Part shown: positions 7,900-61,950 of the stretch, piece by piece
Layout: every line of letters starts with the position of its first letter
Position numbering within the stretch: position 1 is the first letter of the stretch
NCBI GenBank assembly: GCA_044892505.1
Contig: CM097882.1
Span: forward strand, 160,518,001 to 160,582,000
Source: Schmidtea nova
Lineage: Eukaryota
Direction of reading: 5' to 3'
DNA: 64,000 bases
The notes under the pieces: generated by a model
The model's database searches: none
What the model was told of the DNA's origin: nothing
The model's input: only the letters and a program-made list of their open reading frames with translations
Position numbers and translations under genes: made by a program

Positions 7900-8119
7900 A
7901 ATAAATTATTATTTCTTCACCTTTATTAAATAAATTTAATTCAGTTATTTCCGAAATGGGATTTGTAAAAGTACAATTCTGCATTGATGTAGAATTTGAA
8001 AAAGATTGACAATTCCAATCTTTTATAATATCAAATTTCGCAAAACCCATGAGTGATATCTTTTTAGATGATGGTATTGCTCTATTAAGTGAAAAAATTA
8101 CTAAAGTCTGCGAAAATGG
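7900..8119 (+). pseudogene. Maverick/Polinton protein-primed DNA polymerase B, 5' part (interrupted by LTR element)
   Basis: Reads ...GFVKVQFCIDVEFEKD*...LSEKITKVCENG and continues in frame across the ATGG TSD into SNLSINKIKE at 22061. Confidence 0.7.
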
Positions 8120-9228
8120 TGTTGAGGTCCAAGATTTTTAGATCTCAACGCGCACTGGTGTACACTATAGTATATAATAATAAAATCAAGTCTTTTGAAA
8201 AATTTATTCAATAACAAAATTTACCAAATTCAAAAATCAAAAGTTATCAATTACGCTTTCAAATCAAAAGTTATCAATTACGCTTTCAAATCTTCACACT
8301 GTTTTATAAAGTTTATTTAAAGGATATTTTTTGCGTGTCCTACTGTGTGCTTGTTATATAATTAAATGTTATTTGTTTTATTTACTCTTTTAAATATGTT
8401 GGACCTTTTTGTACTGTCCTTTAATGTTAATGTTCTCGCAGGATTTCCCTTTGAGAATAATAAGGCGCAATTTTTGGTTGAAAGCAAGTTTCAAAAATTG
8501 TGGGGCAAATTTTAAAAATTTTCACTTCTTTAAATACTAAAGTTTTTCGTACTCGTTATTGAAATAATTAAAATAATTTCATCTAGATATTGAAACAATT
8601 AAAATAATTTCGTTATTGGAACAAAACAATTAAAACAATTTCAAAAATGTTGACTCGCTACCGAAACAAAATAATTAAAATAATTTCCTTTATCTATTTT
8701 TCCATGCTACAATTATGTTGCCCCGATTCTAATATCCGTTGAAATAAAATAATTTCAACATCCATTGAAATAAAATATTTCATTAAAAAGTACATAAATA
8801 TTAATAATAATTTTCTAAATTATATACATTTAAAAGAACTAAAATAATATATCGCATTCCCAACTAAAATAATAATATCCAATGTTGAATGTTCATATCA
8901 AATATTTACACTAGAAATAAAATATATACAAGAAATAATATATCACATTCCCAATAATAATATCAAATGTCGAATGTTAAGGATCAAATATTAAATATCA
9001 AATGTCGAATGTTAATCAAATATTAAATATCAAATGGATGTTGATATCCTGGTTGGTGCTTGGATTGATTGTGCACTGGGTACTGATTGATATTGGGTTC
9101 TGTTTCTTTTTGAATATTGGTTGTATCGACAGGCTCTGTATAAATAATAACTCTGTATTTGTTGCCCCCCACACTATAATTTTCTGATAGGAGGAATGTA
9201 TTGATGGGCTTACCTTCATCATCCAACA
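8120..9228 (-). repeat. 3' LTR (1109 bp)
   Basis: Matches 20953-22060; about 6 substitutions and one 1-bp indel seen by eye. Confidence 0.97.
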
Positions 9229-11122
9229 TTCCTCCCCGGGCCGTCAAAGTAATGTCCTCATTACCCTTGTCACACAATATTAAATCAATTCTTTTCTCTT
9301 TTATTTGAATTGTTGTTTTTCGAAATCCATTTTTTATCACAAGGTTTATCGTCTCCTCGTGCTCAATTTGTCTTCCAAAATGAGTGCAGAGATCTTTTTC
9401 TGAGACATACTTTTTGTCTTTGTCTATTATGAAGTCTGATTCTTCTGGTTCTGTCCAGTCGGCTAACATTTCAACGTTTGGTTCTGGTCCGATATCCTCT
9501 TCCATTATGTTGTATTTATTACTTGTTGATGGTTCTTCACTATCTTCTTCCATTTTGATGTCGTTACTGCTGGTTGAAGGTTCTTCTATGTTTTCATCTG
9601 CTGAGAAATATTCATCATCTATATCACATTCGTCCATTCTTTCATATAGAATATTTTGAATTTTGGGTTCTGCTTTGATTTCTCTAGTTGGAGCGATAAG
9701 TGGTATTTCTTCTTTTATGATCATGAGTTCATCGTCGTCACTGTCCATGAGCTCTTCCATGAATGACTTTTTTGGTTTGTAATGATTGGTTTTTGTTGAT
9801 TCCCCATGGGACGGCTCCATGCCTTCTCCATCTTCATATTCACTTTCTATCTCACCTTCTGCTTCGCTCTCTTTTTCGTTTTCGAATATTGTTTCTAGTT
9901 GTTCTTCTCCTTTTGCTTGTTTCCTTTTAAGAAGTGTTGCGGAATCCCATTTGACAACTTCTTCCCATTTATTTTCTGAGATATCGTAGATAACTTTTAA
10001 TAGCATTGTGGTGATCTTTGTTGAGAATGGTTCTGGTTGTCTCAATATATCATTTAACTTTTTATCTTTATGCCAACTTTTATGGTAATTGATTACCTGG
10101 TAAGCCAAATTTGATATTTTTATTTTTGGTGGGGCCACGTTTTTTACAAAAGAACACATGAATCGATCCTGTGCCATTTCTCTTATGCCCATAATGTTGT
10201 CCAGATCTATCGTCAATAGTTTTAACTTATCTATGATGTTGAATCCAACTATGATCTTTCCATAGAGAATGTTTCGAATTTCATTTAAGGCTTTATATTC
10301 GTCTTCATTTCCAATTATGTTTTCTTTTGTAGATTTAGTTTTTTCCGTGTAGAATTTTTCTACTTTCGTTCTTGGGGTGATGAACTTGTTATACAGAATT
10401 GCTCCTTTTTTGCTTCTGATACAAATTTCCACTGGTCTGAGATTTTTGTTTATATCTTGAACTACTTTTATATCCACAATTACAGTTAATGAATGCCTTT
10501 CTTCTGTCGTTAATTCTTGATTCGTGAATGATATCTTCTGGTTGATCATATCTTCATTAATTTGTAGGATTGAATGTATTGGGTTTAATTTTATGAACGG
10601 ATTTGGGATTGTCGGGATATATAGCACTTCGATTGCTATCACACATGGTAGGTTATTCATCTGCACTGTCAGCTCATTGAAATCGTTTGACATGCTTCTG
10701 TCTTTTCTTATTAACTTGATAACTGCTGAACAGTTGCTTGTGACAATTAACGGGATTTTATTTTGACATATTGCAACTTCTGTTTTTGTCATGTGGAATA
10801 TTAATCTGTGAGGGATTCTCTTGTTTTCTGCAACTTCTTTGTCGACGTTTTGGTATTTGTCGAAGGTTCCAATAAGCTCTTTGAGTTTCACTCTTCGGGC
10901 CTCATTGAATTTTATCAGATGCATTTCCCGTTCTTCTATTTCGACTTTCATGTCGTTTGGGATACATATTTGATTTGGGAAACTGCGAATTGTAATTGGG
11001 GTTCCATCAGTACATATCTTGTTCTGTAGATTTTTGTAAAAACTCATGTTGAGTTTGTTTATAAAACAAGTGTATTTCTGGTAGGTTCTTGATTGATTGA
11101 AATGAGGTTGATTTTGATTCAT
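9023..11122 (-). CDS. 699-aa accessory ORF: DEDDh (ISG20/REX4-like) exonuclease-like domain with degenerate catalytic motifs, acidic region, C-terminus encoded in U3
   Basis: VIVDIKVV...VEICIRSKKGAILYNKFITP...FYTEKT...EIRNILYGKIIVGFNI..KLKLL resembles REX4-family VAIDCEMV...G.VLYDKYVKP...RT.VSGI...LL.GRILVGH.L..DL..L. Intact ATG-to-stop ORF. Confidence 0.75.
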   Translation of the reverse strand: MNQNQPHFNQSRTYQKYTCFINKLNMSFYKNLQNKICTDGTPITIRSFPNQICIPNDMKVEIEEREMHLIKFNEARRVKLKELIGTFDKYQNVDKEVAENKRIPHRLIFHMTKTEVAICQNKIPLIVTSNCSAVIKLIRKDRSMSNDFNELTVQMNNLPCVIAIEVLYIPTIPNPFIKLNPIHSILQINEDMINQKISFTNQELTTEERHSLTVIVDIKVVQDINKNLRPVEICIRSKKGAILYNKFITPRTKVEKFYTEKTKSTKENIIGNEDEYKALNEIRNILYGKIIVGFNIIDKLKLLTIDLDNIMGIREMAQDRFMCSFVKNVAPPKIKISNLAYQVINYHKSWHKDKKLNDILRQPEPFSTKITTMLLKVIYDISENKWEEVVKWDSATLLKRKQAKGEEQLETIFENEKESEAEGEIESEYEDGEGMEPSHGESTKTNHYKPKKSFMEELMDSDDDELMIIKEEIPLIAPTREIKAEPKIQNILYERMDECDIDDEYFSADENIEEPSTSSNDIKMEEDSEEPSTSNKYNIMEEDIGPEPNVEMLADWTEPEESDFIIDKDKKYVSEKDLCTHFGRQIEHEETINLVIKNGFRKTTIQIKEKRIDLILCDKGNEDITLTARGGMLDDEGKPINTFLLSENYSVGGNKYRVIIYTEPVDTTNIQKETEPNINQYPVHNQSKHQPGYQHPFDI
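9229..9240 (-). promoter_or_regulatory. Polypurine tract
   Basis: Minus strand GGGGAGGAA immediately precedes the 3' LTR start TGTTGG. Confidence 0.85.
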
Positions 11123-11149
11123 CTTTGTTTTTGATTGGTATCGAATTGA

Positions 11150-11430
11150 TTTCTTGATATATTGATTTGAGAGATGATTAATAGGGTTTTGACGGTTTGA
11201 CAGAGATATAATTGAATATATTGAGATATTTGGGTAATTGTCGTAACGATTCGATTGGTCTATAGAATTGACGAGATTGATTGGGTATTTTGTATAGAGA
11301 TAATTGGTAGGGTTTTTTGATTGTTTGTTGTGACAGTTTAAAAAAGAGATGATTGTATTTATTGAGATTTTTGAATGGTTGTTGCAATGATTTGATTGGT
11401 GTGTAGAATTGACGAGATTGATTGGGTTTT
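11150..11430. repeat. Diverged tandem duplication of about 141 bp in the pol-ORF4 spacer
   Basis: gattggt.t.tagaattgacgagattgattgggt occurs at 11253-11286 and 11394-11427. Confidence 0.75.
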
Positions 11431-11587
11431 CGGAATTTGTTGGAACTTGCTTTGTTTTGCTCGTGTATTCTTTTCTAAAAATAAAGGATAAAGTTTTTTG
11501 TTTAAGGCGTATTGTCGGTTTAACCTTATACGCTATATAAATACGAATATATATATGATTTTAATTATTATTATTGACCAAAACGTA

Positions 11588-12375
11588 TTATACCAATGTG
11601 GATTTTGTATATTCACCTGGTATATATTTGCCCAAATGGAAATGTCCTGGTACATTTCTGACCAGTCGGCTCCGATACCGCTGCCTTTTCCACTTGTACT
11701 TTTTATAAATTTGTACGCTAGTTATTAAAGCTAAAACTGCTAATGCTATTATTGATGTTGTGATGACATAATAAGGCCAATGTGGCTTTTTATCCTCTTT
11801 ACGAAATGCTTGTAGTTCCTCTAAGTTATGTATCACTATTGGTCTTTCTTGCCTTATTTTGATAGGTTCTTGTTTTTGTTTTTTGGCATTGTATTGTTTT
11901 TGGAATTTGGCTATTCCAGTGCTTGTTGGTATTTCGTTTGTATGTGGTGTGGTATTTAGTATATTATCTGATGTCGTTGTTGTGCTTTTTATTCTATCGA
12001 GTGTTTTTGTTATGTTATGGTTTTTTGTTATATTCTTGGGTAATTGTTCTGTTTTTATTTTTTTGCATCTCCATGTTGTTGTATCTGTGTTTCTCTGTAT
12101 GCAGATTCTGTATATTGTATTAGGTGCTAGTTTTGTGAAATTAATATAGTTTCCTCTTTCGATTTCGTTGGTTGTTCTGTCGTCTTTTCCTTTTATCATC
12201 TTTGGGTTTTTCCCGTTCGTTGTTTGCATGTATAAATCAATTACTCCTCTATTTATGATAAATGCTCTAACTTCGTTTGTTGATATTTTTATTAATACTT
12301 TGTCAAATTCTATTGTTTCGGTTGAGCCAACAAATGTTATGATTGTTAAGAAGATAGCCGATATTATTAGTTTGT
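11588..12375 (-). other. Type-I membrane protein module fused after integrase (signal peptide, FN3-like domain, Thr-rich stalk, TM, basic tail)
   Basis: KLIISAIFLTIITFVGS (12325-12375); NFTKLAPNTIYRICIQ resembles the FN3 L.P.T.Y.ICV motif; STTTTS stalk; YYVITTSIIALAVLALITSVQIY (about 11704-11773) followed by KKYKWKRQRYR. Confidence 0.75.
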
Positions 12376-15300
12376 TATGAGATCTTAGATTATACTTGTG
12401 AGGTTTATCTATCGTGACCTCGGCTTCCGCCAACTTGCATCTGTTGACATGTACTACTATTGGATCCTCGTTTTTATGTTTTTGTAAGTGTAAATTCTCA
12501 TTTATTACTTTTACTACTTCATATGGGCCTTTATATGGTCTTGCTAATTTTGTTGTTTTTCCCTTTCCTACTTGTGGTGACATAAGTCTAACCTTATCAC
12601 CTACTTTAAAGTTGTGTGGTTTACTATTTTTGTCGTAGTCGGCTTTGTACTGTTCTTGTCTATATTTGACTTTTAGATTGGCTACTTTATACACTTCTTG
12701 CAGTTTTTCCTGCATTAGTGTGACATAATCTGGTGCATCTAAATATTGTGATACTCGAGGTTCAAATATTGTATCTATTGGTGTTGCTGGTTCTCTTAAA
12801 AACATTAAATAATACGGTGAATACCCTGTTGTTTCGTTTGGAGTGATATTATGAATGTATGTGCATTGACTTATGTATTCGTCCCAATCATTTTGATTTT
12901 TTCCTACAGAAACAGCTAGTCTGCTTAGTAATGTCCCATTAAATCTTTCTACTAGTCCATCAGTTTGAGGGTGATACGCTGTTGTGTTGATCTTTTGCAT
13001 GTTAAAAATATTAGCTACTCGTTTTATTAATTCACTAGTAAAATTTGTTCCTTTATCTGTTAATAATCTTTTGGGTGTGCCTATCTTGAAAATAATTTTT
13101 TCTATAAGCAATTTAGCAACTGTTTCTGCTGTTTCGTCTTTTGTTGGAAATGCTTCTGCCCATCTAGTAAAATAATCACTAAATACTAGTATATGTTTAT
13201 TCCCATTAATTGTAGTAGGTAATTTACATAGAAAATCCATTGCACATAGTTCCATTGGTGATGTCGTTGCTGGAATGGGATGTAACGGCGCTTTTGTTTT
13301 TGTACCTGTATTTTTTCTTGTTGCACATATTGTACACGCGTTACACCATCTCTTAACATCTTTCTTTAATTCTTCCCAGTAATATTTTTGTAATAATCTA
13401 CTTGCTGTCTTTCTAGATGATAAGTGACCTCCTAATGCTCCATCGTGATATTGTAGTAGGAGTATTTGTCTTAATTTCTGAGGTACTACTATTAGTTGCT
13501 TACCATTGAAATCTTCTATTACTACTAATTTCTTTGATATTTTATACTTTGAATTGTTTTCTTTTCTGATTTCATTTTTTATTTTACTGATCTCTGGGTC
13601 TTTCATCTGTTCCTCATATATATCGATTGGTTTTTCTGCTACTAGTGCAAATATTTCAAGTGCTCCTAATTCTGGTATTCTTGATAGTGTATCTGCGTTT
13701 TTATTTATTCTACCTGGTTTATATATAATTTTTAGGTGCATGTCTTGTATTTTCATTGCCCATTTAAATAATCTACTTGATGTATCTTTATGTTTCCATA
13801 AGCCTTCTAATGGTTTATGGTCAGTTCTTATTATCACTTCAGTCCCATATATGTATGGTTTGAATTGTTTTAGGGCGAATACTATTGCGTAACATTCTTT
13901 TTCTATTGTTGAATACCTCAGCTGTGCTCCTTTTAATGTTTTACTGGCATATGCTATTACGTAATCTTTCCCTTTTTCTTCTTCTTGGCCTAAGACTGCT
14001 CCTACGGCTTTCCCGCTGGCATCCGTCATTACTATAAACTGTTTTTCGAAATCTGGGTATCTTAACACTGGTGCTGTTATCAATCTTTCTTTTAGTTTAT
14101 TGAATGCTTCTTGATGTTCCTTTGTCCACTTCTTTTGTATCTTGTTAACTTTGCTGTTAATTTCTTGTACTATTAACACATTTTTGCATTCTCCTTTTGT
14201 TCTAATTCCCTTTGTTAGTTCTATTATCGGTGATGCTATCTTTGCATAATCTTGTATGAATTTACGATAGTACCCTGTTAGACCTAAAAACCCTTGTACT
14301 TGTTGTACTGTTTTTGGTATTGGGAATTTCTTTACAACTTCTATTTTTTCTGGATTTGGTTTTATCCCTTCTACTGTAACTATATGCCCTAGAAATAACG
14401 CCGAAGGTTCTGCCCATTTACACTTAGTTGGTTTAATTTTAATTTTTGCTTTTCTTAGTCTCTCGAGTACATTTGTTATATCTTTTAAGTGTTCCTCAAA
14501 TGTTTTTGATGATATTAGTATATCATCCATGTAAACTGCGCAATGTTGTACATTTACTAATATTGTGTTCATTAGGCGCTGAAATGTAGCTGGTGCGTTA
14601 GTTAACCCGAAAGGTAATCGTGTGTACTCATATAAACCATCCTCGATAACAAATGCTGTTTTTTCCGCATCCCCTTCCTCCATTTGAATTTGCATATATC
14701 CCTTATTTGCGTCAATAACTGAAAAATACTTAGCATCCCTAAGTTTATCGTATTGCTCTTGTGCTTTTGGGAATGGGTATGAATCTTTTACTGTTACATC
14801 ATTTAATTTACGATAGTCAATGCACATTCTTATTTCTCCGTCTTTCTTTTTAACGGGTACAATGGGTGATGCCCACTGTGAAAAACTCTGTTTTATTACA
14901 CCTGCATCGTTTAGTTCTTTGATTTGTCGTTTTATTTCCTCTCTTAACTTGTATGGTACGCTGTATGGTCTTTGTTTTATTGGTCTCGCATTACCTGTAT
15001 CTATTACATGTTTGATTATATCGGTATCTCCTAGATCAAATTCGTGTTTTGCAAAAACATCACTATATTTATCTATCAATGTTTGTAGTTGTGCTTGTTG
15101 TGTTATTGTTAAGTATTCATTATTAATTTTTACTTTGTCATATGATTTTATATTATTTATCTTACTAGGTTCGACTACTCCCTTGCCGTTATTATTCATC
15201 ACGCTTATCTCACTGACTTCGTACGTTTTTTCTAATTCACCTTTGAATAATTTTCCCAATTTCGTACCTTTGTGTATTTTAACATTACTTTTTTCATAAT

Positions 15301-15463
15301 TTGCTATTCTCAATGGTATTATTCCCTTTCTCGGAATTACGCATTCATTGGTTAGCATTATATTCTGATTTTGTATAATTGCCGTTTCTGGCTCAAAAAT
15401 AAAAGTGTCCTCACTTTTGATGTTAACTTTTAAGGGAATTATATGATCGCATTCATATTCCAA
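11588..15463 (-). CDS. pol: Pol segment: RT, RNase H, integrase (HHCC, core, GPY/F), then a C-terminal signal/FN3-like/TM module
   Basis: WASPIVPVKKKDG, MCIDYRKLN, LPFGLTNAPATFQ, YMDDILI; TDASG, EKEC, TDHKPL; H-GGH..C..C; MDF, TDKGTNF, GLVERFN; YKGPYEV. Continues ORF2 in frame across one TGA. Confidence 0.97.
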   Translation of the reverse strand: MEYECDHIIPLKVNIKSEDTFIFEPETAIIQNQNIMLTNECVIPRKGIIPLRIANYEKSNVKIHKGTKLGKLFKGELEKTYEVSEISVMNNNGKGVVEPSKINNIKSYDKVKINNEYLTITQQAQLQTLIDKYSDVFAKHEFDLGDTDIIKHVIDTGNARPIKQRPYSVPYKLREEIKRQIKELNDAGVIKQSFSQWASPIVPVKKKDGEIRMCIDYRKLNDVTVKDSYPFPKAQEQYDKLRDAKYFSVIDANKGYMQIQMEEGDAEKTAFVIEDGLYEYTRLPFGLTNAPATFQRLMNTILVNVQHCAVYMDDILISSKTFEEHLKDITNVLERLRKAKIKIKPTKCKWAEPSALFLGHIVTVEGIKPNPEKIEVVKKFPIPKTVQQVQGFLGLTGYYRKFIQDYAKIASPIIELTKGIRTKGECKNVLIVQEINSKVNKIQKKWTKEHQEAFNKLKERLITAPVLRYPDFEKQFIVMTDASGKAVGAVLGQEEEKGKDYVIAYASKTLKGAQLRYSTIEKECYAIVFALKQFKPYIYGTEVIIRTDHKPLEGLWKHKDTSSRLFKWAMKIQDMHLKIIYKPGRINKNADTLSRIPELGALEIFALVAEKPIDIYEEQMKDPEISKIKNEIRKENNSKYKISKKLVVIEDFNGKQLIVVPQKLRQILLLQYHDGALGGHLSSRKTASRLLQKYYWEELKKDVKRWCNACTICATRKNTGTKTKAPLHPIPATTSPMELCAMDFLCKLPTTINGNKHILVFSDYFTRWAEAFPTKDETAETVAKLLIEKIIFKIGTPKRLLTDKGTNFTSELIKRVANIFNMQKINTTAYHPQTDGLVERFNGTLLSRLAVSVGKNQNDWDEYISQCTYIHNITPNETTGYSPYYLMFLREPATPIDTIFEPRVSQYLDAPDYVTLMQEKLQEVYKVANLKVKYRQEQYKADYDKNSKPHNFKVGDKVRLMSPQVGKGKTTKLARPYKGPYEVVKVINENLHLQKHKNEDPIVVHVNRCKLAEAEVTIDKPHKYNLRSHNKLIISAIFLTIITFVGSTETIEFDKVLIKISTNEVRAFIINRGVIDLYMQTTNGKNPKMIKGKDDRTTNEIERGNYINFTKLAPNTIYRICIQRNTDTTTWRCKKIKTEQLPKNITKNHNITKTLDRIKSTTTTSDNILNTTPHTNEIPTSTGIAKFQKQYNAKKQKQEPIKIRQERPIVIHNLEELQAFRKEDKKPHWPYYVITTSIIALAVLALITSVQIYKKYKWKRQRYRSRLVRNVPGHFHLGKYIPGEYTKSTLV

Positions 15464-15519
15464 TTCAAATGCTTCTAATGCAACAACTTCTGTGAACTTG
15501 GATTTATGTTTAATTGCTT

Positions 15520-15850
15520 TTCTCTTTATCGTATTATCTGTTAAATCTATAATTCAATTTTCTAACTTGTTGAGTATATCGATTCCCAATATACATATGC
15601 TATTACATTCTTGCACCACTTTAAATATGTGGTTTATTACCTGTTCTGGTGTTTCGACTATTAGTTCTATGTCTCCCTTTAGTGGAATACGATGTGCTGA
15701 TAACGATACTACTTTATCCGTTGTGCTCATAATATTTCTTTTTTGATCATCTGTCAGTTGATCTTCTCTAATTAAGGATGTTGCTGCTCCTGTATCTACT
15801 AATGCATTTATGATTATATTGTTTATAATTATTCTAAGTCTTGGTCTTGC
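15520..15850 (-). other. Retropepsin aspartic protease domain (TGA at 15554-15556 near its C-terminus)
   Basis: RPRLRIIINNIIINALVDTGAATSLI...CILGIDILNKLEN*IIDLTDNTI. Confidence 0.92.
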
Positions 15851-18800
15851 TTCGTTTGCTGCATCTAATCGTTCCATTGTTTCGACTTCTAAGCTATAAC
15901 AACCATATATCTTTTTAGGTTCACAATAACAATTCTTGTTTTCTCTAGGAATTTTGATTTCTATATTTTCTTGTAGCTCTTTTAGTTGTTCTCTTTGGTT
16001 TTCATATAGTCCTTGTTGTGGTACATTTCCTCCATGTGATATATGCGCTTTAATTATTTCCTCATCGTTTTCATCATCTACCAGTAATTGCCTTTCTTCA
16101 CTCCTTTGGACTTTTATTAAACGTATTTCCTTGTCGTGTTTCGCCGTAATAAGATATTTAGCTATAAATGGGCACAAACATGCTAATAATTTATATGAAT
16201 TTCCAAATACTTGTTTTAGCTGTCTCAGTGATACTAGAGAAGAACATATCATTTTTAGTAATGCAACCGTATAATATATACCTAAGATTGTAGAAAACAT
16301 GTTTCCAAGGACTGCAAAGTATCCCCATATGCTATATAGTACTTTATATGCTACTTTTTTGAAGTATTCTTTTGATAATAACACATCAAAGTTGTAATTT
16401 CCTCCGTAACTTCCTTCGATAACTCTGTTAACCATTATTGAAAGTACTCTTTCTTTTTCGTTTGGAAATAGCATGTGTTTTCTTGCACTTTCTATAGCTT
16501 CTCTCGTATATATACCATTACTGTCCATATCGTTGATTTCTTTAAACTCTAATCTTTTTTCTAGCTCTATGAGTTCTAATTTGAGTGGTTTCATTGTCTC
16601 TTTTCTATCTGACATAGATATCCACATTTCGTCATTTATTTTGTATAATGGGTCTAATAGGTTAGTGCATTTTTCTATTTTTCTCGGTATATATGTTTTT
16701 TCTGTTAATATTCTAGTAATTGGTTGAAGGTATACCCTTTCTCCTTTATATATTACCGGTAATTCATTAGCGCACTGATTATTTGTTGCTAACGATACAC
16801 TAACAGGTTTACATTGAAATGTCTGTATCACTTCTCCTACTATCCTTGCAAATGTTCCTTCTTCTGAGAAGATTATTGGTGCCATTAAATCTGGGTTTGT
16901 TACCGCCACTGCCATTTTTGTCCTCAATATTTCTCTGTTGAGTTTGCAATCGCTCATAATTGTTGATTGATATACTTTATCTAATTGTACTAGTTGGTTA
17001 TGATAGAAAAAATCGATTTTATTGTTGAAGTATGATGCAAGTTTGACGTCGAATTTATTTACTTTTTGTTTTGCATCTTTGACTTCCTCTTTGCTTATGT
17101 ATATCCCTTCATAATTAGTTTGTATTATTTCCTTACCACATTTTACACTTTTCCTTTTACTAACAAACCTCATTGCTTCGTTTTCAGATTCTGACATATA
17201 TATTGTTGGTGTATCTTTTTCTTGTACAATTGTTGTTTTCCTTTTTTGATCTCTCACCCTTTTTGAGTCTACTTCTGTGAACTGTTTTCCTTTGATTTCC
17301 CTAAATTTTAATGATTTTAATTTTGTTAACTGACAATCGTATTTATCTATTTTGTATATTAGCATTGATTCTCCTGTATCGCAATAAGATTCTTCTAATG
17401 TACAAAATTTGTATATCATCATTTTCTTTGAGCTGCTGTCGAATGATGCTTTGAACTTTCTCAGTTCTACCATGTAGTGTCTCCTTACTACAACATTACT
17501 CAGTTTTTCGCCCCATATTGTATATTCTCCTCCTTCACAATATCCTCCTTTTGATGTCCATCCCACGACATTTACATCTTGTCTCATTTTTGCCCCTATC
17601 CTTGCTTCTAGTTCTATTCCTTTATGACCGCTATATTTTACTTTCTTTGTTTTAAATGCATCTTCACACTCTATTGGCGACAATATTACTGCTTCGGGTG
17701 TCCACGTAGGTTTTAACACTGTTCTTGCCCCAACATGACATATATATGCTTCCTCCTGATACTTTACTATGCACTCTTTAGCCTCTGTATGAATAAAGTC
17801 TGATTCTTGATAAACATGGAATCTTTGAGGCTCTGACATGATTAATTTAGTTGGATTTGCTTCAGGGCAATTTTCAACATCCAACAGTGAGTATTTTTGT
17901 CCCCACTTTGGATTTTGACAATCGTATGCTACCATTGCATTGCCCCCCTTGATTAAATCTAATAACAAAGTGATTATGACTATTACTATGGAGGTTATCG
18001 ATTTACTCTCTGTCTTTGGTTTTACTGTTGCTTTCTTTATTAATTGTTTTATTACATCATCTGTATCACTCTCTTTATTCGTCGTATCTTTATCATATAA
18101 TACTTTCCATCCTCCTTTCTTTTTTATCCATGGTATTGCCTCTACTTTCAATCTTTTAAACATCATTGTTGCTACTTTTTCTAATTGCTCTTTTGGATTT
18201 TCCTTTAGGAGCTTTTTATATCTTGCGGCCAAGTATGCCATGGCCGTTATTATTTTATCTTTATCTATCCCTGTATTAAACAGGATTTTTAACACTGTTT
18301 TTTCATTTGCTTCCTCTGTAGCTAGTTTTTTAGTATCCTTTTTAATTAACATCATCCTTTCAGTTATATTTTCAATTAGTACTGTTGGCTTTGTTTCTGG
18401 AAATAGCTTAATATTTATTGCTTTTATTACTTCTTTTATTTTGTTTACGTCCTTATTATCGTCTTGATACTCTGATTGTTTATGTTTATGTTGATTTGCA
18501 ATCTCTCTTAATCGTTCTGCTGTCTTCCTATTCTCCGATTTTTCTATTATTTCTGATTTTCGAGGTCTTCCTCTACCTCGTTTTGATGTTTCTGCATCTT
18601 TTGTTTTTGCTTCCTCAGCTATTCTTTCTATTGTTTCTTGTAAGTTGCTATACTTTTCATCTATAGGTTTAAATATAATTTCTTCATCCATTACTGATTT
18701 CTTTGTTTCGCTAGGTGATTTATCCCATAGCCTAAATAATCTATCAAAATCGTTTTCTTCATTTATACTCAGCTCAACCGACGGTACTGGCGTCACTATT

Positions 18801-19000
18801 TCATCGATCATTTGTTTTTCTACTGTGGCTACCACAATATTATCACTTACTGGGTTTATCCCATAATCGATTAAGTACTCGTCACTTAATAATTCTATTC
18901 CGTTAAAATATAATTTTATTACATCTTTCTCTCCTATGGTTCCTGGCCATTTGGCTCTTACCATTCGTTTTAATTTGCTCACTTTAGTGCAAGGATGCAT
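15554..19000 (-). CDS. Middle polyprotein segment: ubiquitin-like, AT-hook, Bcl-2-like, signal peptide, chuvirus-G/gB-like glycoprotein, TM, aspartic protease
   Basis: See sub-features. Protease ALVDTGAATSLI ... ILGIDIL at the C-terminus. Confidence 0.92.
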   Translation of the reverse strand: MHPCTKVSKLKRMVRAKWPGTIGEKDVIKLYFNGIELLSDEYLIDYGINPVSDNIVVATVEKQMIDEIVTPVPSVELSINEENDFDRLFRLWDKSPSETKKSVMDEEIIFKPIDEKYSNLQETIERIAEEAKTKDAETSKRGRGRPRKSEIIEKSENRKTAERLREIANQHKHKQSEYQDDNKDVNKIKEVIKAINIKLFPETKPTVLIENITERMMLIKKDTKKLATEEANEKTVLKILFNTGIDKDKIITAMAYLAARYKKLLKENPKEQLEKVATMMFKRLKVEAIPWIKKKGGWKVLYDKDTTNKESDTDDVIKQLIKKATVKPKTESKSITSIVIVIITLLLDLIKGGNAMVAYDCQNPKWGQKYSLLDVENCPEANPTKLIMSEPQRFHVYQESDFIHTEAKECIVKYQEEAYICHVGARTVLKPTWTPEAVILSPIECEDAFKTKKVKYSGHKGIELEARIGAKMRQDVNVVGWTSKGGYCEGGEYTIWGEKLSNVVVRRHYMVELRKFKASFDSSSKKMMIYKFCTLEESYCDTGESMLIYKIDKYDCQLTKLKSLKFREIKGKQFTEVDSKRVRDQKRKTTIVQEKDTPTIYMSESENEAMRFVSKRKSVKCGKEIIQTNYEGIYISKEEVKDAKQKVNKFDVKLASYFNNKIDFFYHNQLVQLDKVYQSTIMSDCKLNREILRTKMAVAVTNPDLMAPIIFSEEGTFARIVGEVIQTFQCKPVSVSLATNNQCANELPVIYKGERVYLQPITRILTEKTYIPRKIEKCTNLLDPLYKINDEMWISMSDRKETMKPLKLELIELEKRLEFKEINDMDSNGIYTREAIESARKHMLFPNEKERVLSIMVNRVIEGSYGGNYNFDVLLSKEYFKKVAYKVLYSIWGYFAVLGNMFSTILGIYYTVALLKMICSSLVSLRQLKQVFGNSYKLLACLCPFIAKYLITAKHDKEIRLIKVQRSEERQLLVDDENDEEIIKAHISHGGNVPQQGLYENQREQLKELQENIEIKIPRENKNCYCEPKKIYGCYSLEVETMERLDAANEARPRLRIIINNIIINALVDTGAATSLIREDQLTDDQKRNIMSTTDKVVSLSAHRIPLKGDIELIVETPEQVINHIFKVVQECNSICILGIDILNKLEN
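16140..17935 (-). other. env: Envelope glycoprotein domain, chuvirus-G / herpes-gB-like (class III fusogen-like)
   Basis: Preceded by a hydrophobic signal (SITSIVIVIITLLLDLIKGGNA). Starts VAYDC..YSLLDVENCP. Cys-rich ectodomain with CG..I.QTNYEGIYI, FARIVGEVIQTFQCKPV, CANELPVIYKG.RVYLQPITRIL. Hydrophobic TM region VLYSIWGYFAVLG...LLKMIC. Confidence 0.8.
18092..18523 (-). other. Bcl-2-like helical domain
   Basis: BH1-like ILFNTGIDKDKIITAMAYLAA and BH2-like EAIPWIKKKGGWKVL (W at 18107-18109) with Bcl-2-like spacing, followed by a hydrophobic anchor. Confidence 0.65.
18554..18583 (-). other. AT-hook motif
   Basis: KRGRGRPRKS. Confidence 0.8.
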
Positions 19001-19054
19001 CTTTTGTTTAATACTAAAAAATTAATTATCATTTGATTCAATCGTTACATTTAG
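18824..19054 (-). other. Ubiquitin-like domain spanning the gag stop codon
   Basis: LNVTIESNDN*FFSIKQKMHPCTKVSKLKRMV...IKLYFNGIELLSDEYLIDYGI matches the Ub pattern (V.P.TKV..LK; L.F.G..L.D...L.DY.I). Confidence 0.7.
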
Positions 19055-20704
19055 TGTTTCATGCAATTTTTCATTTTTTCTTATATATTCTCCATAACAT
19101 TTCAGCATCTCTTTTATTTCTATTTCTAATTCAAATACTCTCGTTACATTTTGTCTCTTTACCATCATTGGTATTAAATTTCTAAGTCTCTCTAAATCAA
19201 TCCCATTAACCTGTATTTTATTGATTACTCTTAATGTTTCATTGTCATCAAACGGTTGCTTATGCAATACCTCTTTAAATTCCTCTATTAATTCTTTTTG
19301 TCTATTTTCTTCTGTAAGAAATATTTCATCTGCTTCTCTAATTTCCTTTAACTCATCATTATCAATATCTACCTCATTTGTAAAGGTGCTAAATTCATTT
19401 ATAGACATTTCAAGTTTTCTCTCAATAAGTCTTCCATATTGAGTTTTAAATTCTTTTAGTTCCTCTCTTAATATATTTATTTCTTTATTTGCTGATTCAA
19501 GCTCAGCACTATTTACCTGTTTTATCTCAGGCTCATTTTTAAATCTTACTCTTATTGGTGAATCTGCTCGTGGTTTATTACATACCTTTGCTAGGTGACC
19601 ATACTTTTGGCAATTATAACATTTTATTTGTCCATTAAAATTCACTTTATCTCTACCATCATTATTATAAGTATTTCGCCTCACTGGGCTATCTTGCCTA
19701 TTTCTCGAATTATCTCTATATCTATTATCTCTTCTATTATATTCGAAGCGACTATCTCTATTATTTTTATTATATCCACTGTAACTGTTTCTGTTATTAC
19801 CAGAACGACTATCTCTAAAATTATCTCTGTTGTCTCTATCATTATCTCTATCAAAACGATTGTCTCTAAAACTGTCTCTATTATTATTTCTTTGATAACT
19901 ATCTTTAAAATTATTTCTATTTCTATTATCGAAATTTTTATTTCCTGGACTATTAAACCTTCCCCTGTTTTCAGGTGATTGGCTTCTATTAGGACTAAAT
20001 TTTCTTCTATTATTAACAAATTTCAAGTATAATTGTTTCATTTCTTCCCAGGGAATACTGTCATCCTTATTTCTCAACTCAGGTTTTACCTCGGGTTGTT
20101 TTTCAACTTCTACAGCATCTACCTCTGGTTTAAATCTATCTCTTTGTATTGCTTCAATGCGTTTTGCCTTTTGAACTAACTCATTTAAGTCTTCATACTC
20201 AATTGTAATTAATGCTTTGTATAAGTATTTTTGGATGCCGTTCCAAAACTGATCCTCAATTAATTTACTAGTGTGATCTCCGGCACCAAATGCCTTTTTT
20301 GCTAATTCTGTTATCGTGTATATATATTCACCTACTGATTCTCTGGCTCCTTGGTATCTACTTCTAGATTTTTGAACATTTATTTTTTGTAAGTCTCGAT
20401 CTATTACTATTTCTTTTCTAAGGTTTGTAACTAACTCTTGATAATTAATGCCTTTACATGCTAAATTATTGTATGCCTGTAATGCGTATCCCTTTAAGTA
20501 TAATGGGATTCGTTGTTTTAATTCATTTGTTTTCCATCCGCAAGCTTCTGCATACTGTGCGATTTCGGCAAAAAAGTCGTCGAACTTTTCAGGGTCTCCT
20601 TTATATGATTCTATTGGTAATGTTTTTATAAAATTATGGCTGCTTATGTTGTCTGTATTACTGTTACTTCCACTATTGCTGCTGCCTGTACTATTATTAC
20701 TCAT
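19022..20704 (-). CDS. gag: Gag: capsid domain, R/D/N-rich region, CCHC zinc knuckle, coiled-coil extension
   Basis: YKGDPEKFDDFF..AEACGW; RYQGARESVGEY; CYNCQKYGHLAKVC. First ATG at 20704 (the track start at 20737 is TTG). Confidence 0.93.
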   Translation of the reverse strand: MSNNSTGSSNSGSNSNTDNISSHNFIKTLPIESYKGDPEKFDDFFAEIAQYAEACGWKTNELKQRIPLYLKGYALQAYNNLACKGINYQELVTNLRKEIVIDRDLQKINVQKSRSRYQGARESVGEYIYTITELAKKAFGAGDHTSKLIEDQFWNGIQKYLYKALITIEYEDLNELVQKAKRIEAIQRDRFKPEVDAVEVEKQPEVKPELRNKDDSIPWEEMKQLYLKFVNNRRKFSPNRSQSPENRGRFNSPGNKNFDNRNRNNFKDSYQRNNNRDSFRDNRFDRDNDRDNRDNFRDSRSGNNRNSYSGYNKNNRDSRFEYNRRDNRYRDNSRNRQDSPVRRNTYNNDGRDKVNFNGQIKCYNCQKYGHLAKVCNKPRADSPIRVRFKNEPEIKQVNSAELESANKEINILREELKEFKTQYGRLIERKLEMSINEFSTFTNEVDIDNDELKEIREADEIFLTEENRQKELIEEFKEVLHKQPFDDNETLRVINKIQVNGIDLERLRNLIPMMVKRQNVTRVFELEIEIKEMLKCYGEYIRKNEKLHETLNVTIESNDN

Positions 20705-49000: not shown

Positions 49001-51879
49001 GATGATACAGCAGCACCCATTGATCCATTATCATTCTTGGAACATACAAAAGAAAATGACACTCTCTCTTTGCAATGCCATTTGACTGTTGAGGTGAAGA
49101 TTGCTAATCATCCAGAAGGTAAGTGGTCCCTATAATATGATCTAGGTAGAATGTTGTATATCATTTAATTGTTTTTATATTACAGACGACCATCAAGAAG
49201 CCGATATTGAGGATCCATCCCAGTGGTTCGCCCTCAACGATGCGTTAAGAATTCAGTTGGTGAAAAGAGGTTCACGACAAATCATGGACGTACAATTTCC
49301 ACTAGATGATAAAGGAAGGAAATTTAGTTCCCATCACTACAAACCAAATCTTGTGAATGGAGAAAGTGTGACACGTTCTTGGCTAGTTTATTCGAAAAGT
49401 AAGAACGTCGTATTCTGTTTCTCGTCTAAACTCTTCACGAAAGAATCGGTGGCAATAACAAACAGTGGTTGTTGTGATTGGAAAAATATGTCCGCTATTC
49501 TCTCAAGTCATGAAGTGTCGCCAACCCACATAAAAGCTTATATGCAATGGAAGGAGTTAGAAGTTCGTTTGCGTACAGAAAATACTATTGATGCAGCCAA
49601 TCAGCGTGTCGTAAAACAAGAAGTCGAACACTGGAGACAAGTATTGGAAAGACTCATCGGACTCGTTAGAGTACACGCAGTTCAAAACTTAGCATTTCGA
49701 GGTTCGTCCGATAAGCTTTTTACGCCCAACAATGATAACTTTCTTCAATTTGTTGAATACTTAGGAAGCTTTGATCCTGTAATGAAAGAACACATCCGGC
49801 GCATCAAAAGTGATGAAGTTCATGTGCACTATGCGGGCAAGAATATTCAAAATGAAGTCATTGGATTGTTGGCAAAAAGGTGAGAGACGAAATTCTTAGT
49901 GAAGCCAAAAATGCAAAATACTTCTCAATAATCTTTGATTGTACATCTGACGTTAGTCATGTTGAACAAATAACTTTTGTGATTCGATTTGTGTCCTTGT
50001 GCGAAGCTCAAGAAGAACGTGTTGTAAATTTTGCTGTTCACGAACATTTTCTGTAATATGAGGTTGCATCTAATACAACTGGGGCTGGAATGACGAATTT
50101 AATTGTGAAGAAGATCGAGGAAATGGGCTTTGTTTTGACTAATCTCAGACGGCAAGGTTACGACAACGGCTCTAACATGAAAGGAAAGCATAATGGCGTA
50201 CAGAAGAAAATTCTTGATTTAAATCCTCGAGCATTTTATATCCCTTACACTGTTCATTCACTGAACCTTGTCGTCAACGATGCTGCACATTCCTGCACAG
50301 AAGCTGTCAAATCTTTTGGAGTCGTACAGGCGGTGTAAGTGTTTTTTTCTGCGTCCACACATTGCTGGAAGGTTCTCATGAATAATGTGTCGGGTCTAAC
50401 TGTCAAACCTCTCAGTGAAACGAGGTGGTCAAGTAGAGTAAATGCCGTTCGTGTTTTACGTTATCAAATTCGAGAAGTCTAGGATGCCCTTGTCTCCATT
50501 ATCGAAGATACGACTCTAACTGGAGTGACTGCCTCACAAACTCGTGCAGATGGTCAAGGAATTGCATTTCAGCTGAGTTGCTTCAAATTTGTTGTTAGTG
50601 TGGTCGTTTGGTATAACATCCTTTACGAGGTCAACTTTGCGAACAAACTGCTTCAATCTCAATCTGTCGACATGTCCGAAGCTGTCACTCAGCTGAATAA
50701 AACCATTCAATATCTCGTAAACTATCGCTCTGACGACAGCTTTCTCAAAACTCTTGAAGAGGCAGAAGACTAAGCAAAAGATCTGGAGATAGACCCAACA
50801 TTTCCTGGTGTGACGCGAGTTCTGGATCGTACGAAAAAACGAATGTTTCAGTATGAAGCGGCTGATGATCAAATATCAGATCCAAGACAGTCGTTCAAGT
50901 GTCATTTTTTCTTCGTGGTGTTAGACGCTGCTATCAACTCTATGGAAGAGCGCTTCACGCTCTTGAATGCTCATCACACACTGTTTGGGTTTCTCAGTTG
51001 TATTGGAGGAGACTATCAGTCCGCCACCTTTCTTGAAAAATGCCGATCATTAGAAAAAGCTCTGACTGACGACAGTGACAACGACATTGATGTCCTCCGT
51101 CTTTTTGAAGAAATAAAATGCCTACAACATCGAATTCAAGAGAGAAAAACACCAAAGCAGTTGCTTGAATTTATCTTTGCTAATCAACTGTGCAGTGTAT
51201 TACCAAATTTGTCTGTGGCTTTGTGCATCATGCTTACTATCCTAGTATCTGTTGCAGCAGGAGAATCCAGCTTCTCAAAACTGAAAATAATAAAGAATTA
51301 CTTGCGACCTACAATGGCAGAAGATCATTTATCGGGCTTGGCTATTCTCTCCATTGAGAAAGAAATGGCTTCCAAGGTGGACATCGGCGAACTTGCTCGG
51401 AAATTTGCCTCAATAAAAATAAGGCACATTCCATTCTTTTCTGATTGAACTATTGTCTGTACGGTTTGTCTGTATTTCAACAATTACATCGCACACATTC
51501 TCTGACCATGTATTTTTTCAGTAGACGGTGTAGAATAAATAGAATTGTAGACGGGCAGTAGAAAAGATAATTACAACAACAAATATTAAGAGAAACATGA
51601 AAGATGAACGCACAGTGATTTAAACAATCCAAAATGAACTTTACATATAGGCTATAGGGCGGCAAATTTGCGTTTTGCCTAGGGCGGCAAAAACCCACCA
51701 GCCGGCCACGGTAACTAGTCACTGAATAAATACTTTATTTGAACTATGTACTTACTTATAATTAATTTTTTATGAGAAATTTAAAATTTGGAACGTATTT
51801 TCCAAATTTAATACAAAAGTGGGTTCACAGTGCGCGGTTTCGGTTTGCGCGCTGTTTTTTTCAGAACGAGGGATTACCG
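46048..51879 (+). mobile_element. pogo/Tigger transposon, degenerate transposase about 46504-48198, with a hAT inserted near its 3' end
   Basis: CENP-B HTH (RKRNILTLKVKLAIVKEIENG), FSACKGWFERFKRR, VFNADETGLFWK, ILLILDNTPSH. Termini CAGTAATCC / GGATTACCG. Confidence 0.88.
48299..51710 (+). mobile_element. hAT transposon (ZMYM-like/TTF-zinc finger and hAT dimerisation domains), disrupted transposase about 48824-51448
   Basis: TIR cggggccggct / agccggccacg. TSD GTAACTAG (48291-48298, 51711-51718). RSWLVYSKSKNVVFCF, LAFRG, QGYDNGSNMKG, ETRWSSR, ESSFSKLKIIKNYLR. Confidence 0.95.
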
Positions 51880-61324: not shown

Positions 61325-61950
61325 ATGGAATTAAGAAACGATGCAGTGTTTCAAATTGTTGGACCGAGCGGGAGTGGGAAAACTTTATTTGTTGGTAAAT
61401 TATTACAATCAAAATTATTCAAATCAAAGTTTAATAAAATTTATTGGCATTGGGGAGCAGATGAAGAACATGGAATGACTCAAGATCAATTTTGTAAAAT
61501 AAAAATGACAATCATAAAAGGTTTCGATAAAAATTGTTCATCTAGATTAAGAGAAGGGGATGTGATTACTATTGATGATTTGTATCAAGAGGCAAATAAA
61601 GAGAAGGATTTTAATAATTTATTTACAAAAGTCGCTAGACATAAAGGAGTTGCAGTTATTTTTTTTACTCAGAATTTATTTCATCAGGGTGGCGGTCATT
61701 GAACGCAGAATTTGAATGTTCAATATCTTGTTGTTTTTGAAAATCCTAGAGATGCAACAGTTATTGATTTTCTTGAAAGACAAGAATTCCCTATTAATCA
61801 CAATTTCTTGATTGATGCATTATAAGATGCTACAAAAGTTCCTCATGATATGTTTTTCTTGATTTCACACAACAATGTTGTGATGATTTATGAGTTAGAA
61901 CTGATATTTTCAGCAAGGAAGGAGCCATGGTTTACAAAAAAAGTTTTTGA
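61325..61950 (+). pseudogene. Maverick/Polinton A32/FtsK-like packaging ATPase
   Basis: GPSGSGKT Walker A, ITIDD Walker B, ARHKG.AVIFFTQNLF, YLVVFENPRD. In-frame stops after 61702. Confidence 0.92.

What the first reader, a model, noticed from the sequence alone, without database searches (positions are those of the whole stretch)
11588..20704. Gypsy element encoding a single membrane-threaded polyprotein with the fusion glycoprotein between Gag and protease
Seen: gag (ends 19022), ORF2 (19000-15554) and pol (15463-11588) are in the same frame, separated by 21 and 90 stop-free nt after single TAA and TGA codons, giving one frame of about 3,040 codons. Inside it, a signal peptide, Cys-rich glycoprotein and TM lie upstream of the DTG protease. 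Established: env genes in Ty3/Gypsy errantiviruses, retroviruses and env-bearing BEL/Pao elements (Ascaris Tas with gB-like env; mosquito Pao elements with chuvirus-like G) normally follow pol. Inference: translation would go cytosol (Gag), ER lumen (Env), cytosol (PR-RT-RH-IN), lumen (FN3), cytosol, with processing by signal peptidase plus the viral protease, as in flavivirus polyproteins. I know of no described LTR lineage with this layout. It may be an infectious virus-like element.
Basis: partly seen in the sequence, partly recalled or inferred. Interest (0 to 1): 0.95.

Follow-up and report, generated by a model that had tools for sequence, protein, structure and literature searches.

The report
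Gypsy retrovirus with env before protease
This is a recently inserted 13.9-kb gypsy-type endogenous retrovirus with a chuvirus/herpes-gB-like fusion glycoprotein between gag and protease in the same reading frame; the layout is real and shared by relatives but was already described in 2022-2023, whereas I found no paper describing its Bcl-2-like and ISG20-like extra genes.

Summary
That frame has 3,905 codons and 4 internal stops; the other two frames have about 400 each. The element is larger than stated: 8120-22060, with 1.1-kb LTRs 99.4% identical, a 4-bp target duplication, a primer-binding site and a polypurine tract.

ORF2 holds a Monjiviricetes-type fusion glycoprotein (Pfam 4e-89) between a signal-like segment and a membrane anchor, followed by a retropepsin. 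Its AlphaFold model matches herpesvirus gB and chu-like virus glycoproteins, so it is a class III fusogen.

Nine unrelated metagenomic proteins carry glycoprotein, protease and RT (six also IN) in that order in one uninterrupted ORF. Three more carry gag and glycoprotein in one ORF. This rules out a nested insertion or mis-assembly.

The novelty claim fails. GAG-ENV-POL gypsy elements with gB-type env are published (Sacco 2022; Chary and Hayashi, PMC13524379).

In this copy two in-frame stops interrupt the polyprotein, with no recoding signal; neutral decay predicts about two.

Possibly new: ubiquitin-like and Bcl-2-like domains ahead of the env signal, a second membrane module after integrase, and an ISG20-like ORF running into the 3' LTR. 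The host is unidentified.

The parts
8116..8119 (.). Target-site duplication, copy 1 (ATGG)
   Evidence: the same 4 nt directly flank the two LTRs
8120..9228 (-). 3' LTR (1,109 bp, TG..CA ends)
   Evidence: 99.4% identical to 20953-22060
9023..11122 (-). ORF4, 699 aa, an ISG20-like exonuclease-fold accessory gene. It reads through the polypurine tract and about 205 nt into the 3' LTR.
   Evidence: BLASTP 4e-14 to the RNase_T ORF of L001. The family profile hits ISG20L2 at 1e-11 and ISG20 at 5e-9. ORF4 alone hits ISG20 at 8e-5.
10088..10543 (-). ISG20-like core of ORF4 (aa ~194-345)
9229..9237 (-). Polypurine tract abutting the 3' LTR
11186..11430 (-). Two copies of a 141-nt (47-codon) tandem repeat, in frame, between pol and the ORF4 start
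11588..15463 (-). pol ORF, 1,291 aa: RT, RNase H, integrase, then a C-terminal membrane module
14378..14854 (-). Reverse transcriptase (RVT_1, 4e-36)
13742..14128 (-). RNase H (RT_RNaseH and RT_RNaseH_2)
12434..13486 (-). Integrase (H2C2 zinc domain, rve core, p58_C-like end)
11714..12367 (-). Second membrane module: hydrophobic segment, about 180 aa with 4 N-glycosylation sequons (NxS/T), then another hydrophobic segment
   Evidence: The same position and topology occur in P0002, P0006, P0155, P0016 and P0151, but there is no sequence similarity and no Pfam hit.
15554..19000 (-). ORF2, 1,148 aa: ubiquitin-like region, AT-hook, Bcl-2-like domain, signal, glycoprotein, membrane anchor, protease
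18806..19000 (-). Possible ubiquitin-like domain (aa 1-65), tentative
   Evidence: The A3 profile hits ISG15 at E 0.05. P0014 gives a weak Pfam ubiquitin hit at the aligned position.
18086..18358 (-). Bcl-2-like domain (aa ~215-305), probable
   Evidence: Pfam Bcl-2 E 2.4e-6, 28.5 bits, below the 31.4 cutoff. Weak Bcl-2 hits at the same place in P0005 and P0014. A GGW motif is invariant in 4 sequences. The profile hits Bcl-xL at 6e-4.
17942..17998 (-). Hydrophobic segment: an internal signal for the glycoprotein and possibly a tail anchor for the Bcl-2-like domain
   Evidence: an aligned hydrophobic segment occurs in relatives
16316..17935 (-). Class III fusion glycoprotein ectodomain (14 conserved Cys)
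   Evidence: Pfam PF24664 at 4e-89. AlphaFold2 pLDDT 81.5. Foldseek best hits are gB at 7e-15 and chu-like virus glycoproteins at 1e-42.
16232..16300 (-). Glycoprotein transmembrane anchor
15560..15853 (-). Retropepsin (RVP, DTG motif)
19022..20704 (-). gag, from the first ATG, with a CCHC zinc knuckle
   Evidence: tblastn 1e-20 to the gag ORFs of L005 and L001, which carry Retrotrans_gag.
20932..20950 (-). Primer-binding site, starting TGG, 2 nt after the 5' LTR
20953..22060 (-). 5' LTR
22061..22064 (.). Target-site duplication, copy 2 (ATGG)

Best explanation
[quoted passage not shown] It spans 8120-22060 on the minus strand.

In this lineage the envelope gene, a class III fusogen of the chuvirus-G/gB type, is not a separate 3' gene. 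It is built into the gag-pol polyprotein between gag and protease.

The likely mechanism is inferred, not shown:
1. The genomic RNA is translated from gag.
2. The hydrophobic segment after the Bcl-2-like domain acts as an internal signal and sends the glycoprotein ectodomain into the ER lumen.
3. The glycoprotein's membrane anchor returns the chain to the cytosol, so protease, RT, RNase H and integrase are made on the cytosolic face, tethered under the envelope protein.
4. A second pair of hydrophobic segments after integrase displays a small glycosylated module in the lumen.
5. Signal peptidase cuts on the lumenal side and the retropepsin cuts on the cytosolic side, releasing the parts.

The Bcl-2-like and ISG20-like accessory parts probably act on host cell-death or RNA-decay defences.

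This copy has two in-frame stops within the gag-to-integrase frame and two more before ORF4, and no frameshifts. It most likely no longer makes the full chain.
For: Provirus anatomy: LTRs, target duplication, primer-binding site and polypurine tract.

Domains: CCHC; PF24664 at 4e-89; RVP; RT, RNase H and integrase.

Class III fold: model pLDDT 81.5; gB at 7e-15 with probability 1.0 over about 640 columns; chu-like virus glycoproteins at 1e-42, TM-score up to 0.67; 14 conserved Cys.

The order is conserved in uninterrupted ORFs:
- P0002, P0006, P0016, P0017, P0151 (4,844 aa), P0155, P0170 and P0009 carry glycoprotein, protease and RT, most with integrase as well.
- P0001, P0010 and P0014 carry gag and glycoprotein in one ORF.

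Contigs L001 and L003-L005 show the same gene order, and L007 shows it as far as the contig reaches (gag, glycoprotein, proteases); L001 also has an RNase_T ORF after pol.

The pattern signal / glycoprotein / anchor / enzymes / segment / segment recurs in P0002, P0006, P0155, P0016 and P0151.

The RT-RNase H-integrase regions of glycoprotein-linked elements are 47-55% identical to this one, against 40-44% or less for other gypsy pols. They form one neighbour-joining clade.

One frame has 4 internal stops in 3,905 codons, against about 400 in each of the other frames.
Against: - In this copy the frame is interrupted. No read-through context is apparent from the sequence at the ORF boundaries (my own reading), and the 110 nt after each ORF end form no unusual RNA structure (z = -0.78, +1.02, -0.39).
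- Neutral decay since insertion predicts about 2.2 new stops. The stops may therefore be damage, or native gene boundaries; sibling copies are needed to tell.
- No transcript, splice or protein data are available.
- Topology rests on hydropathy alone.
- The clade of glycoprotein-linked pols has only 57/100 bootstrap support.
- The Bcl-2-like call is below Pfam's cutoff, and its structure model is poor (pLDDT 47).
Confidence: 0.72

Rival explanations
1. The genes are the same, but they are expressed separately. The in-frame stops are native gene ends. Gag is made from the full-length RNA. The glycoprotein-protease ORF and pol are reached by re-initiation, basal read-through or spliced messages, as env is in retroviruses and Drosophila gypsy. 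No single membrane-threaded chain is made in this species.
For: ORF2 opens with an ATG a few codons after the end of gag. Contig L001 has gag and the giant ORF in different frames. The four stops seen exceed the roughly 2.2 expected from decay, though not significantly.
Against: Protease and RT would still need a joint product, and the boundary between them is uninterrupted in all eight relatives that cover it. Gag and glycoprotein are fused in P0001, P0010 and P0014. No recoding signal was found. Four ORFs sharing one frame is unexpected for independent genes.
Confidence: 0.22
2. It is a chance chimera: a chuvirus-derived endogenous viral element or another insertion nested inside an ordinary gypsy element, or an assembly artefact.
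For: Jingchuvirales glycoprotein EVEs are often found next to gypsy fragments in insects and were judged not to be captures (PMC10084718).
Against: There are no internal LTRs or extra repeats. The glycoprotein is in frame with gag and protease. At least twelve diverged relatives from several samples have the same order. The pol sequences of glycoprotein-bearing elements cluster together.
Confidence: 0.02
3. It is a domesticated or decaying host locus. The glycoprotein or the accessory ORFs have been kept for host use, while the element itself is dead.
For: The frame is interrupted, and the ISG20-like ORF lacks two of the acidic motif positions.
Against: The LTRs are 99.4% identical, and the target duplication, primer-binding site and polypurine tract are intact, so the insertion is recent. 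All enzyme motifs are present. The neighbourhood consists of other transposons, not genes.
Confidence: 0.04

Closest known systems
Non-canonical GAG-ENV-POL Ty3/gypsy endogenous retroviruses. Sources: Sacco et al. 2022, J Gen Virol 103:001739, nematodes (not held; known to me only by its title and citation); Chary and Hayashi, eLife 2026 / bioRxiv 2023, PMC13524379, covering Nematoda, Bryozoa and Platyhelminthes.
   Same: A gypsy-type pol. The envelope gene sits between gag and pol. The envelope is a gB-like class III fusogen related to RNA-virus glycoproteins. The elements have LTRs and a tRNA primer-binding site.
   Different: I could not compare sequences, so membership of those clades is untested. 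The paper I could read treats GAG, ENV and POL as three ORFs. It does not mention a shared polyprotein, a protease fused to ENV, Bcl-2-like or ISG20-like genes, or a second membrane module. My recollection that Sacco et al. describe a continuous gag-env-pro-pol ORF is unverified.
Anakin and related mosquito BEL/Pao elements with a chuvirus-like glycoprotein (Dezordi et al. 2020, PMC7642597)
   Same: The same glycoprotein superfamily (PF24664), captured by an LTR retroelement.
   Different: They belong to a different superfamily (BEL/Pao) and the glycoprotein lies downstream of pol. P0065 shows that order: DUF5641, then the glycoprotein. Those glycoproteins score 600-800 bits against PF24664, while this one scores 300.
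Drosophila errantiviruses (gypsy, ZAM, Idefix)
   Same: Ty3/gypsy elements with an envelope gene.
   Different: Their env is F-type, lies after pol, and is expressed from a spliced message. The last point is established knowledge and was not tested here.
Flavivirus-type membrane-threaded polyproteins (a working analogy only)
   Same: Cytosolic and lumenal segments alternate, set by internal signal and anchor segments. Processing is shared between host signal peptidase and a viral protease. This is inferred here.
   Different: There is no homology, and the protease is aspartic, not serine. The processing is not shown here.
Viral Bcl-2 homologues of large DNA viruses, and cellular Bcl-xL
   Same: The BH1-BH2 region matches at the profile level, and a C-terminal hydrophobic anchor follows.
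   Different: The score is below Pfam's cutoff and no confident fold was obtained. To my knowledge none has been reported in a retroelement.

Membership tests
Ty3/gypsy (Metaviridae) LTR retroelement | LTRs with TG..CA ends, a 4-6 bp target duplication, a primer-binding site and a polypurine tract | tested here: met
Ty3/gypsy (Metaviridae) LTR retroelement | Domain order PR-RT-RH-IN, with integrase after RNase H, and a gypsy-type RT/RNase H and H2C2 integrase | tested here: met
   All nearest pols are gypsy-type, and there are no BEL/Pao (Peptidase_A17/DUF1759) hits.
Ty3/gypsy (Metaviridae) LTR retroelement | Gag with a capsid domain and a CCHC knuckle | tested here: met
   CCHC. Gag aligns to the L001 and L005 gags, which hit Retrotrans_gag.
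GAG-ENV-POL gypsy ERVs (Sacco 2022; Chary and Hayashi) | env ORF between gag and pol | tested here: met
GAG-ENV-POL gypsy ERVs (Sacco 2022; Chary and Hayashi) | env is a gB-type class III fusogen | tested here: met
GAG-ENV-POL gypsy ERVs (Sacco 2022; Chary and Hayashi) | RT groups with the published nematode, bryozoan or flatworm clades | not testable with these tools
   No sequence of those elements was available. The supplements are not held.
GAG-ENV-POL gypsy ERVs (Sacco 2022; Chary and Hayashi) | Host is a nematode, bryozoan or flatworm | tested here: inconclusive
   Rfam and tRNA scans found nothing. A neighbouring Tc1 transposase has its best named hit in the fluke Paragonimus westermani at 65% identity, which is only a weak hint.
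Monjiviricetes/chuvirus-type fusion glycoprotein (PF24664) | Profile match above the curated cutoff | tested here: met
   299.7 bits against a cutoff of 27
Monjiviricetes/chuvirus-type fusion glycoprotein (PF24664) | Conserved cysteine framework, an N-terminal signal and a C-terminal anchor | tested here: met
   14 Cys, as in 16 of the 17 relatives compared. Hydrophobic segments.
Monjiviricetes/chuvirus-type fusion glycoprotein (PF24664) | Class III fold | tested here: met
Bcl-2 family | Pfam Bcl-2 match above the gathering score | tested here: not met
   28.5 bits against 31.4, E 2.4e-6
Bcl-2 family | BH1/BH2-region similarity conserved in relatives, followed by a C-terminal anchor | tested here: met
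Bcl-2 family | Helical-bundle fold | tested here: inconclusive
   The model has pLDDT 47 and is all-helical in this region, but it is not usable for a fold search.
ISG20/DEDDh exonucleases | Sequence homology to the exonuclease domain | tested here: met
ISG20/DEDDh exonucleases | Complete set of acidic catalytic motif positions | tested here: not met
   In the alignments, two motif positions that are acidic in L001 or ISG20 are not acidic in the window copy.
   No hit at E<=10.

The most novel reading that the evidence does not exclude
This element and its metagenomic relatives (up to more than 20 kb, with one ORF of 4,844 aa) may form an undescribed, gene-rich branch of envelope-bearing gypsy retroviruses of small invertebrates. 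In this branch the envelope fusogen is translated as part of the gag-pol polyprotein. The elements would also have collected host-derived countermeasure genes, as large DNA viruses do: Bcl-2-like, ubiquitin-like, ISG20-like, ankyrin and RING genes, and multiple retropepsins. A Bcl-2 homologue whose tail anchor also serves as the envelope signal peptide would be a first for retroelements.
Probability: 0.3. Interest if true: 0.8.

Novelty: new member of a known kind. Interest (0 to 1): 0.5.

Why it matters
The gene order is not new, so the headline claim loses most of its force. What remains useful is this:

1. There is independent evidence, from unannotated metagenome contigs, that envelope, protease and polymerase are one uninterrupted ORF with a conserved pattern of membrane segments. 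That gives the published GAG-ENV-POL order a mechanistic reading: co-translational coupling of envelope and replicase at a membrane.

2. The accessory genes resemble host cell-death and antiviral-RNA-decay factors. This suggests these elements interact with host defences as true viruses do.

3. Many 'chuvirus glycoprotein EVEs' found next to gypsy fragments may be parts of such retroviruses rather than fossils of RNA viruses.

Tried and rejected
- The search for homologous proteins with ORF2 aa 356-1148 returned nothing. This was probably saturation of the word prefilter, because the exhaustive HMMER search then found 1,164 relatives.
- Scans of metagenome and viral contigs with ORF2 gave one short locus and none. 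The glycoprotein alignment was too diverged to build search patterns.
- No second copy or fragment of the element exists in the window, so the stops could not be compared between siblings.
- The structure model of the ORF2 N-terminus was too poor to use (pLDDT 47).
- A lack of N-glycosylation sequons (NxS/T) in the ectodomain looked odd at first but is not: 0 seen against 2.7 expected, and relatives have 1-3.
- The C-terminal membrane modules of relatives show no sequence similarity to each other, so homology is not claimed.
- Troyka elements were rejected because they have CG..CG ends and 3-bp duplications. BEL/Pao was rejected because there are no Pao-type domains.
- A variant genetic code was rejected because only 4 stops occur in 3,905 codons.
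- Host identification failed: Rfam and tRNA scans were empty and the Tc1 search gave only a weak hint of a flatworm.
- Sacco et al. 2022 is not in the library.

Full report
**1. Observation**

It also gives a fourth at 9023-11122. A single-frame translation of 20800-8900 shows that all four share one frame. From the start of the gag ORF to the end of ORF4 there are 3,905 codons with 4 internal stops. The other two frames have 424 and 388 stops, and base composition predicts about 320. The long open frame is therefore real.

**2. The element is bigger than the finding**

Direct repeats at 8120-9228 and 20953-22060 are the LTRs. They are 1,109 and 1,108 bp long, 99.4% identical (7 differences), and start TG and end CA. 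The same 4 nt, ATGG, flank both. A primer-binding site starting TGG lies 2 nt inside the 5' LTR. A purine tract abuts the 3' LTR. The provirus is thus 8120-22060, 13.9 kb, on the minus strand, and recently inserted. No other copy or fragment lies in the window.

**3. Genes**

- gag has a CCHC knuckle. It aligns with the gags of relatives that hit Retrotrans_gag.
- ORF2 matches Pfam Monjiviricetes_fusion (PF24664, 4e-89) and, at its C-terminal end, RVP.
- pol has RT, RNase H, an H2C2 zinc domain and an rve integrase core. The DTG and YMDD motifs are visible.
- Hydropathy finds segments at ORF2 aa 335-353 and 901-923, and at pol aa 1033-1051 and 1232-1250.

**4. The glycoprotein is a class III fusogen**

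I aligned ORF2 aa 330-960 with 45 relatives; 14 cysteines are conserved. The AlphaFold2 model built from that alignment has a mean pLDDT of 81.5.

- Against the PDB, Foldseek's best matches are herpesvirus gB (E 7e-15, probability 1.0, about 640 aligned columns).
- Against viral models, the best are chu-like virus glycoproteins (1e-42 to 1e-40, TM-score up to 0.67), followed by xinmo-, rhabdo- and nyavirus glycoproteins and gB.
- Named sequence relatives include a chuvirus glycoprotein and insect genomic copies.

**5. The layout is conserved, so it is not a chimera**

The exhaustive HMMER search with ORF2 found 1,164 relatives. The best are long polyproteins.

- Pfam and BLAST show glycoprotein, then protease, then RT, most with integrase as well, in one uninterrupted ORF in P0002, P0006, P0016, P0017, P0151 (4,844 aa), P0155, P0170 and P0009.
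- Gag and the glycoprotein share one ORF in P0001, P0010 and P0014.
- Contigs L001, L003, L004, L005 and L007 (sample ERZ25039515), L006 and L008 (ERZ5540424) and L002 (ERZ893782) were fetched; L001, L003, L004 and L005 show the same gene order, L007 shows it as far as the contig reaches, and L002, L006 and L008 hold little beyond the polyprotein ORF itself.
- All close relatives come from metagenomes. One had been mis-binned into a bacterial MAG.
- The RT-RNase H-integrase regions of these elements are 47-55% identical to the window's, against 44% or less for other gypsy pols. They form one neighbour-joining clade, with bootstrap support of only 57/100.
- The pattern signal / glycoprotein / anchor / enzymes / segment / segment recurs in P0002, P0006, P0155, P0016 and P0151.

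**6. Is it one polyprotein in this copy?**

In the window copy, two in-frame stops interrupt the gag-to-integrase frame and two more lie between pol and ORF4. There are no frameshifts. I see no familiar read-through context at the ORF ends. The 110 nt downstream of each fold no better than shuffled sequence (z = -0.78, +1.02, -0.39).

From the LTR divergence, about 37 substitutions are expected in the frame since insertion, and 5.9% of possible substitutions create a stop. That gives about 2.2 expected new stops. Relatives are uninterrupted at the same junctions.

The simplest reading is that the lineage encodes one chain and this copy is lightly damaged. Native gene ends cannot be excluded without sibling copies.

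**7. Accessory parts not in the finding**

(a) ORF2 N-terminus.
- Pfam Bcl-2 hits at aa 232-298 (E 2.4e-6, 28.5 bits, below the 31.4 cutoff).
- Weak Bcl-2 hits fall at the same place in P0005 and P0014.
- A four-sequence alignment has an invariant GGW motif, followed by a linker and the hydrophobic segment.
- The profile of that alignment hits Bcl-xL structures at about 6e-4, and ISG15 (for the first 50 residues) at 0.05.
- The structure model was too poor to use.
- I rate the Bcl-2-like domain as probable and the ubiquitin-like domain as tentative.
- If real, the hydrophobic segment would serve both as the Bcl-2 tail anchor and as the envelope signal. This is inference.

(b) The membrane module after integrase. 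It is conserved in position and topology only. There is no sequence similarity between relatives and no FN3 hit.

(c) ORF4.
- It is homologous to the RNase_T ORF after pol in L001 (4e-14).
- The family profile hits ISG20L2 (1e-11) and ISG20 (5e-9). ORF4 alone hits ISG20 at 8e-5.
- Two acidic motif positions are not acidic in this copy, so activity is doubtful.
- ORF4 reads through the polypurine tract into the 3' LTR.

(d) Relatives add 2-4 retropepsin copies, ankyrin repeats and a RING ORF.

**8. Comparison with what is known**

- Chary and Hayashi (PMC13524379) report Ty3/gypsy elements arranged GAG-ENV-POL with gB-type ENV in Nematoda, Bryozoa and Platyhelminthes. They cite Sacco et al. 2022 for nematode ERVs with env and pol flipped. 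They also report chuvirus-like glycoproteins next to gypsy pol in 114 arthropod elements.
- That paper does not mention a polyprotein, fusion, read-through, Bcl-2 or ISG20.
- Sacco et al. is not held. My memory that it describes a continuous gag-env-pro-pol ORF is unverified.
- Anakin (BEL/Pao) has the glycoprotein after pol (P0065).
- Dezordi et al. 2023 saw gypsy fragments beside glycoprotein EVEs but did not call them captures.

**9. Host**

The host is unknown. The window has about 30% G+C and is full of other transposons: Tc1/mariner, hAT, a GIY-YIG ORF and an A32-like ATPase. The Tc1 transposase's best named hit is a trematode at 65% identity, which is a weak hint only.

**10. Verdict**

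The novelty is that of a new member of a published kind, with accessory genes that may be new.

Noticed in passing
window 9023-9228 and 21859-22049: The last ~205 nt of ORF4 lie inside the LTR, so the same coding stretch is present in the 5' LTR (tblastn 96-100% identity, split by the one LTR indel). The layout resembles accessory ORFs that overlap U3 in some retroviruses.
   Followed up: partly
window 11123-11587: The ~155 codons between the end of pol and the ORF4 ATG hold only one further in-frame stop and contain a 47-codon tandem repeat (11186-11430, 80% identical). This stretch may be coding, or may have been until recently.
   Followed up: partly
window ~18550-18585 (ORF2 aa ~140-150): An AT-hook-like GRP motif (Pfam AT_hook, weak) is conserved with P0014 and lies in a stretch also similar to P0004 and P0151.
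   Followed up: no
L001 6512-21046 and 21702-23398: A metagenomic relative encodes a single 4,844-aa ORF with four retropepsin domains, ankyrin repeats and a C2H2 finger. It is followed by an RNase_T exonuclease ORF and a RING (zf-C3HC4_3) ORF, which makes it an unusually gene-rich retroelement.
   Followed up: partly
L007 1-2340: An ORF4-like (ISG20-like) ORF lies upstream of the gag of the next element on this contig. This may reflect tandem elements or a different gene order.
   Followed up: no
window 38342-39175: A Tc1/mariner transposase ORF (DDE_3 and HTH_Tnp_Tc3_2). Its best named relative is from the fluke Paragonimus westermani, at 65% identity.
   Followed up: partly
window 50774-51445: An ORF carrying a hAT dimerisation domain.
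   Followed up: no
window 34386-34865: An ORF with a GIY-YIG nuclease domain, possibly from a Penelope-like element.
   Followed up: no
window 61304-61699 (and ORF 57977-58819): An ORF with a Pox_A32-like packaging ATPase domain, possibly from a Maverick/Polinton fragment. The neighbouring 281-aa ORF has no Pfam hit.
   Followed up: no
P0006 (NCBI HBK71150.1) and P0176: Eukaryotic retrovirus-like polyproteins are filed in public databases under bacterial MAGs (Flavobacteriaceae, Turicibacter), which points to binning contamination.
   Followed up: no
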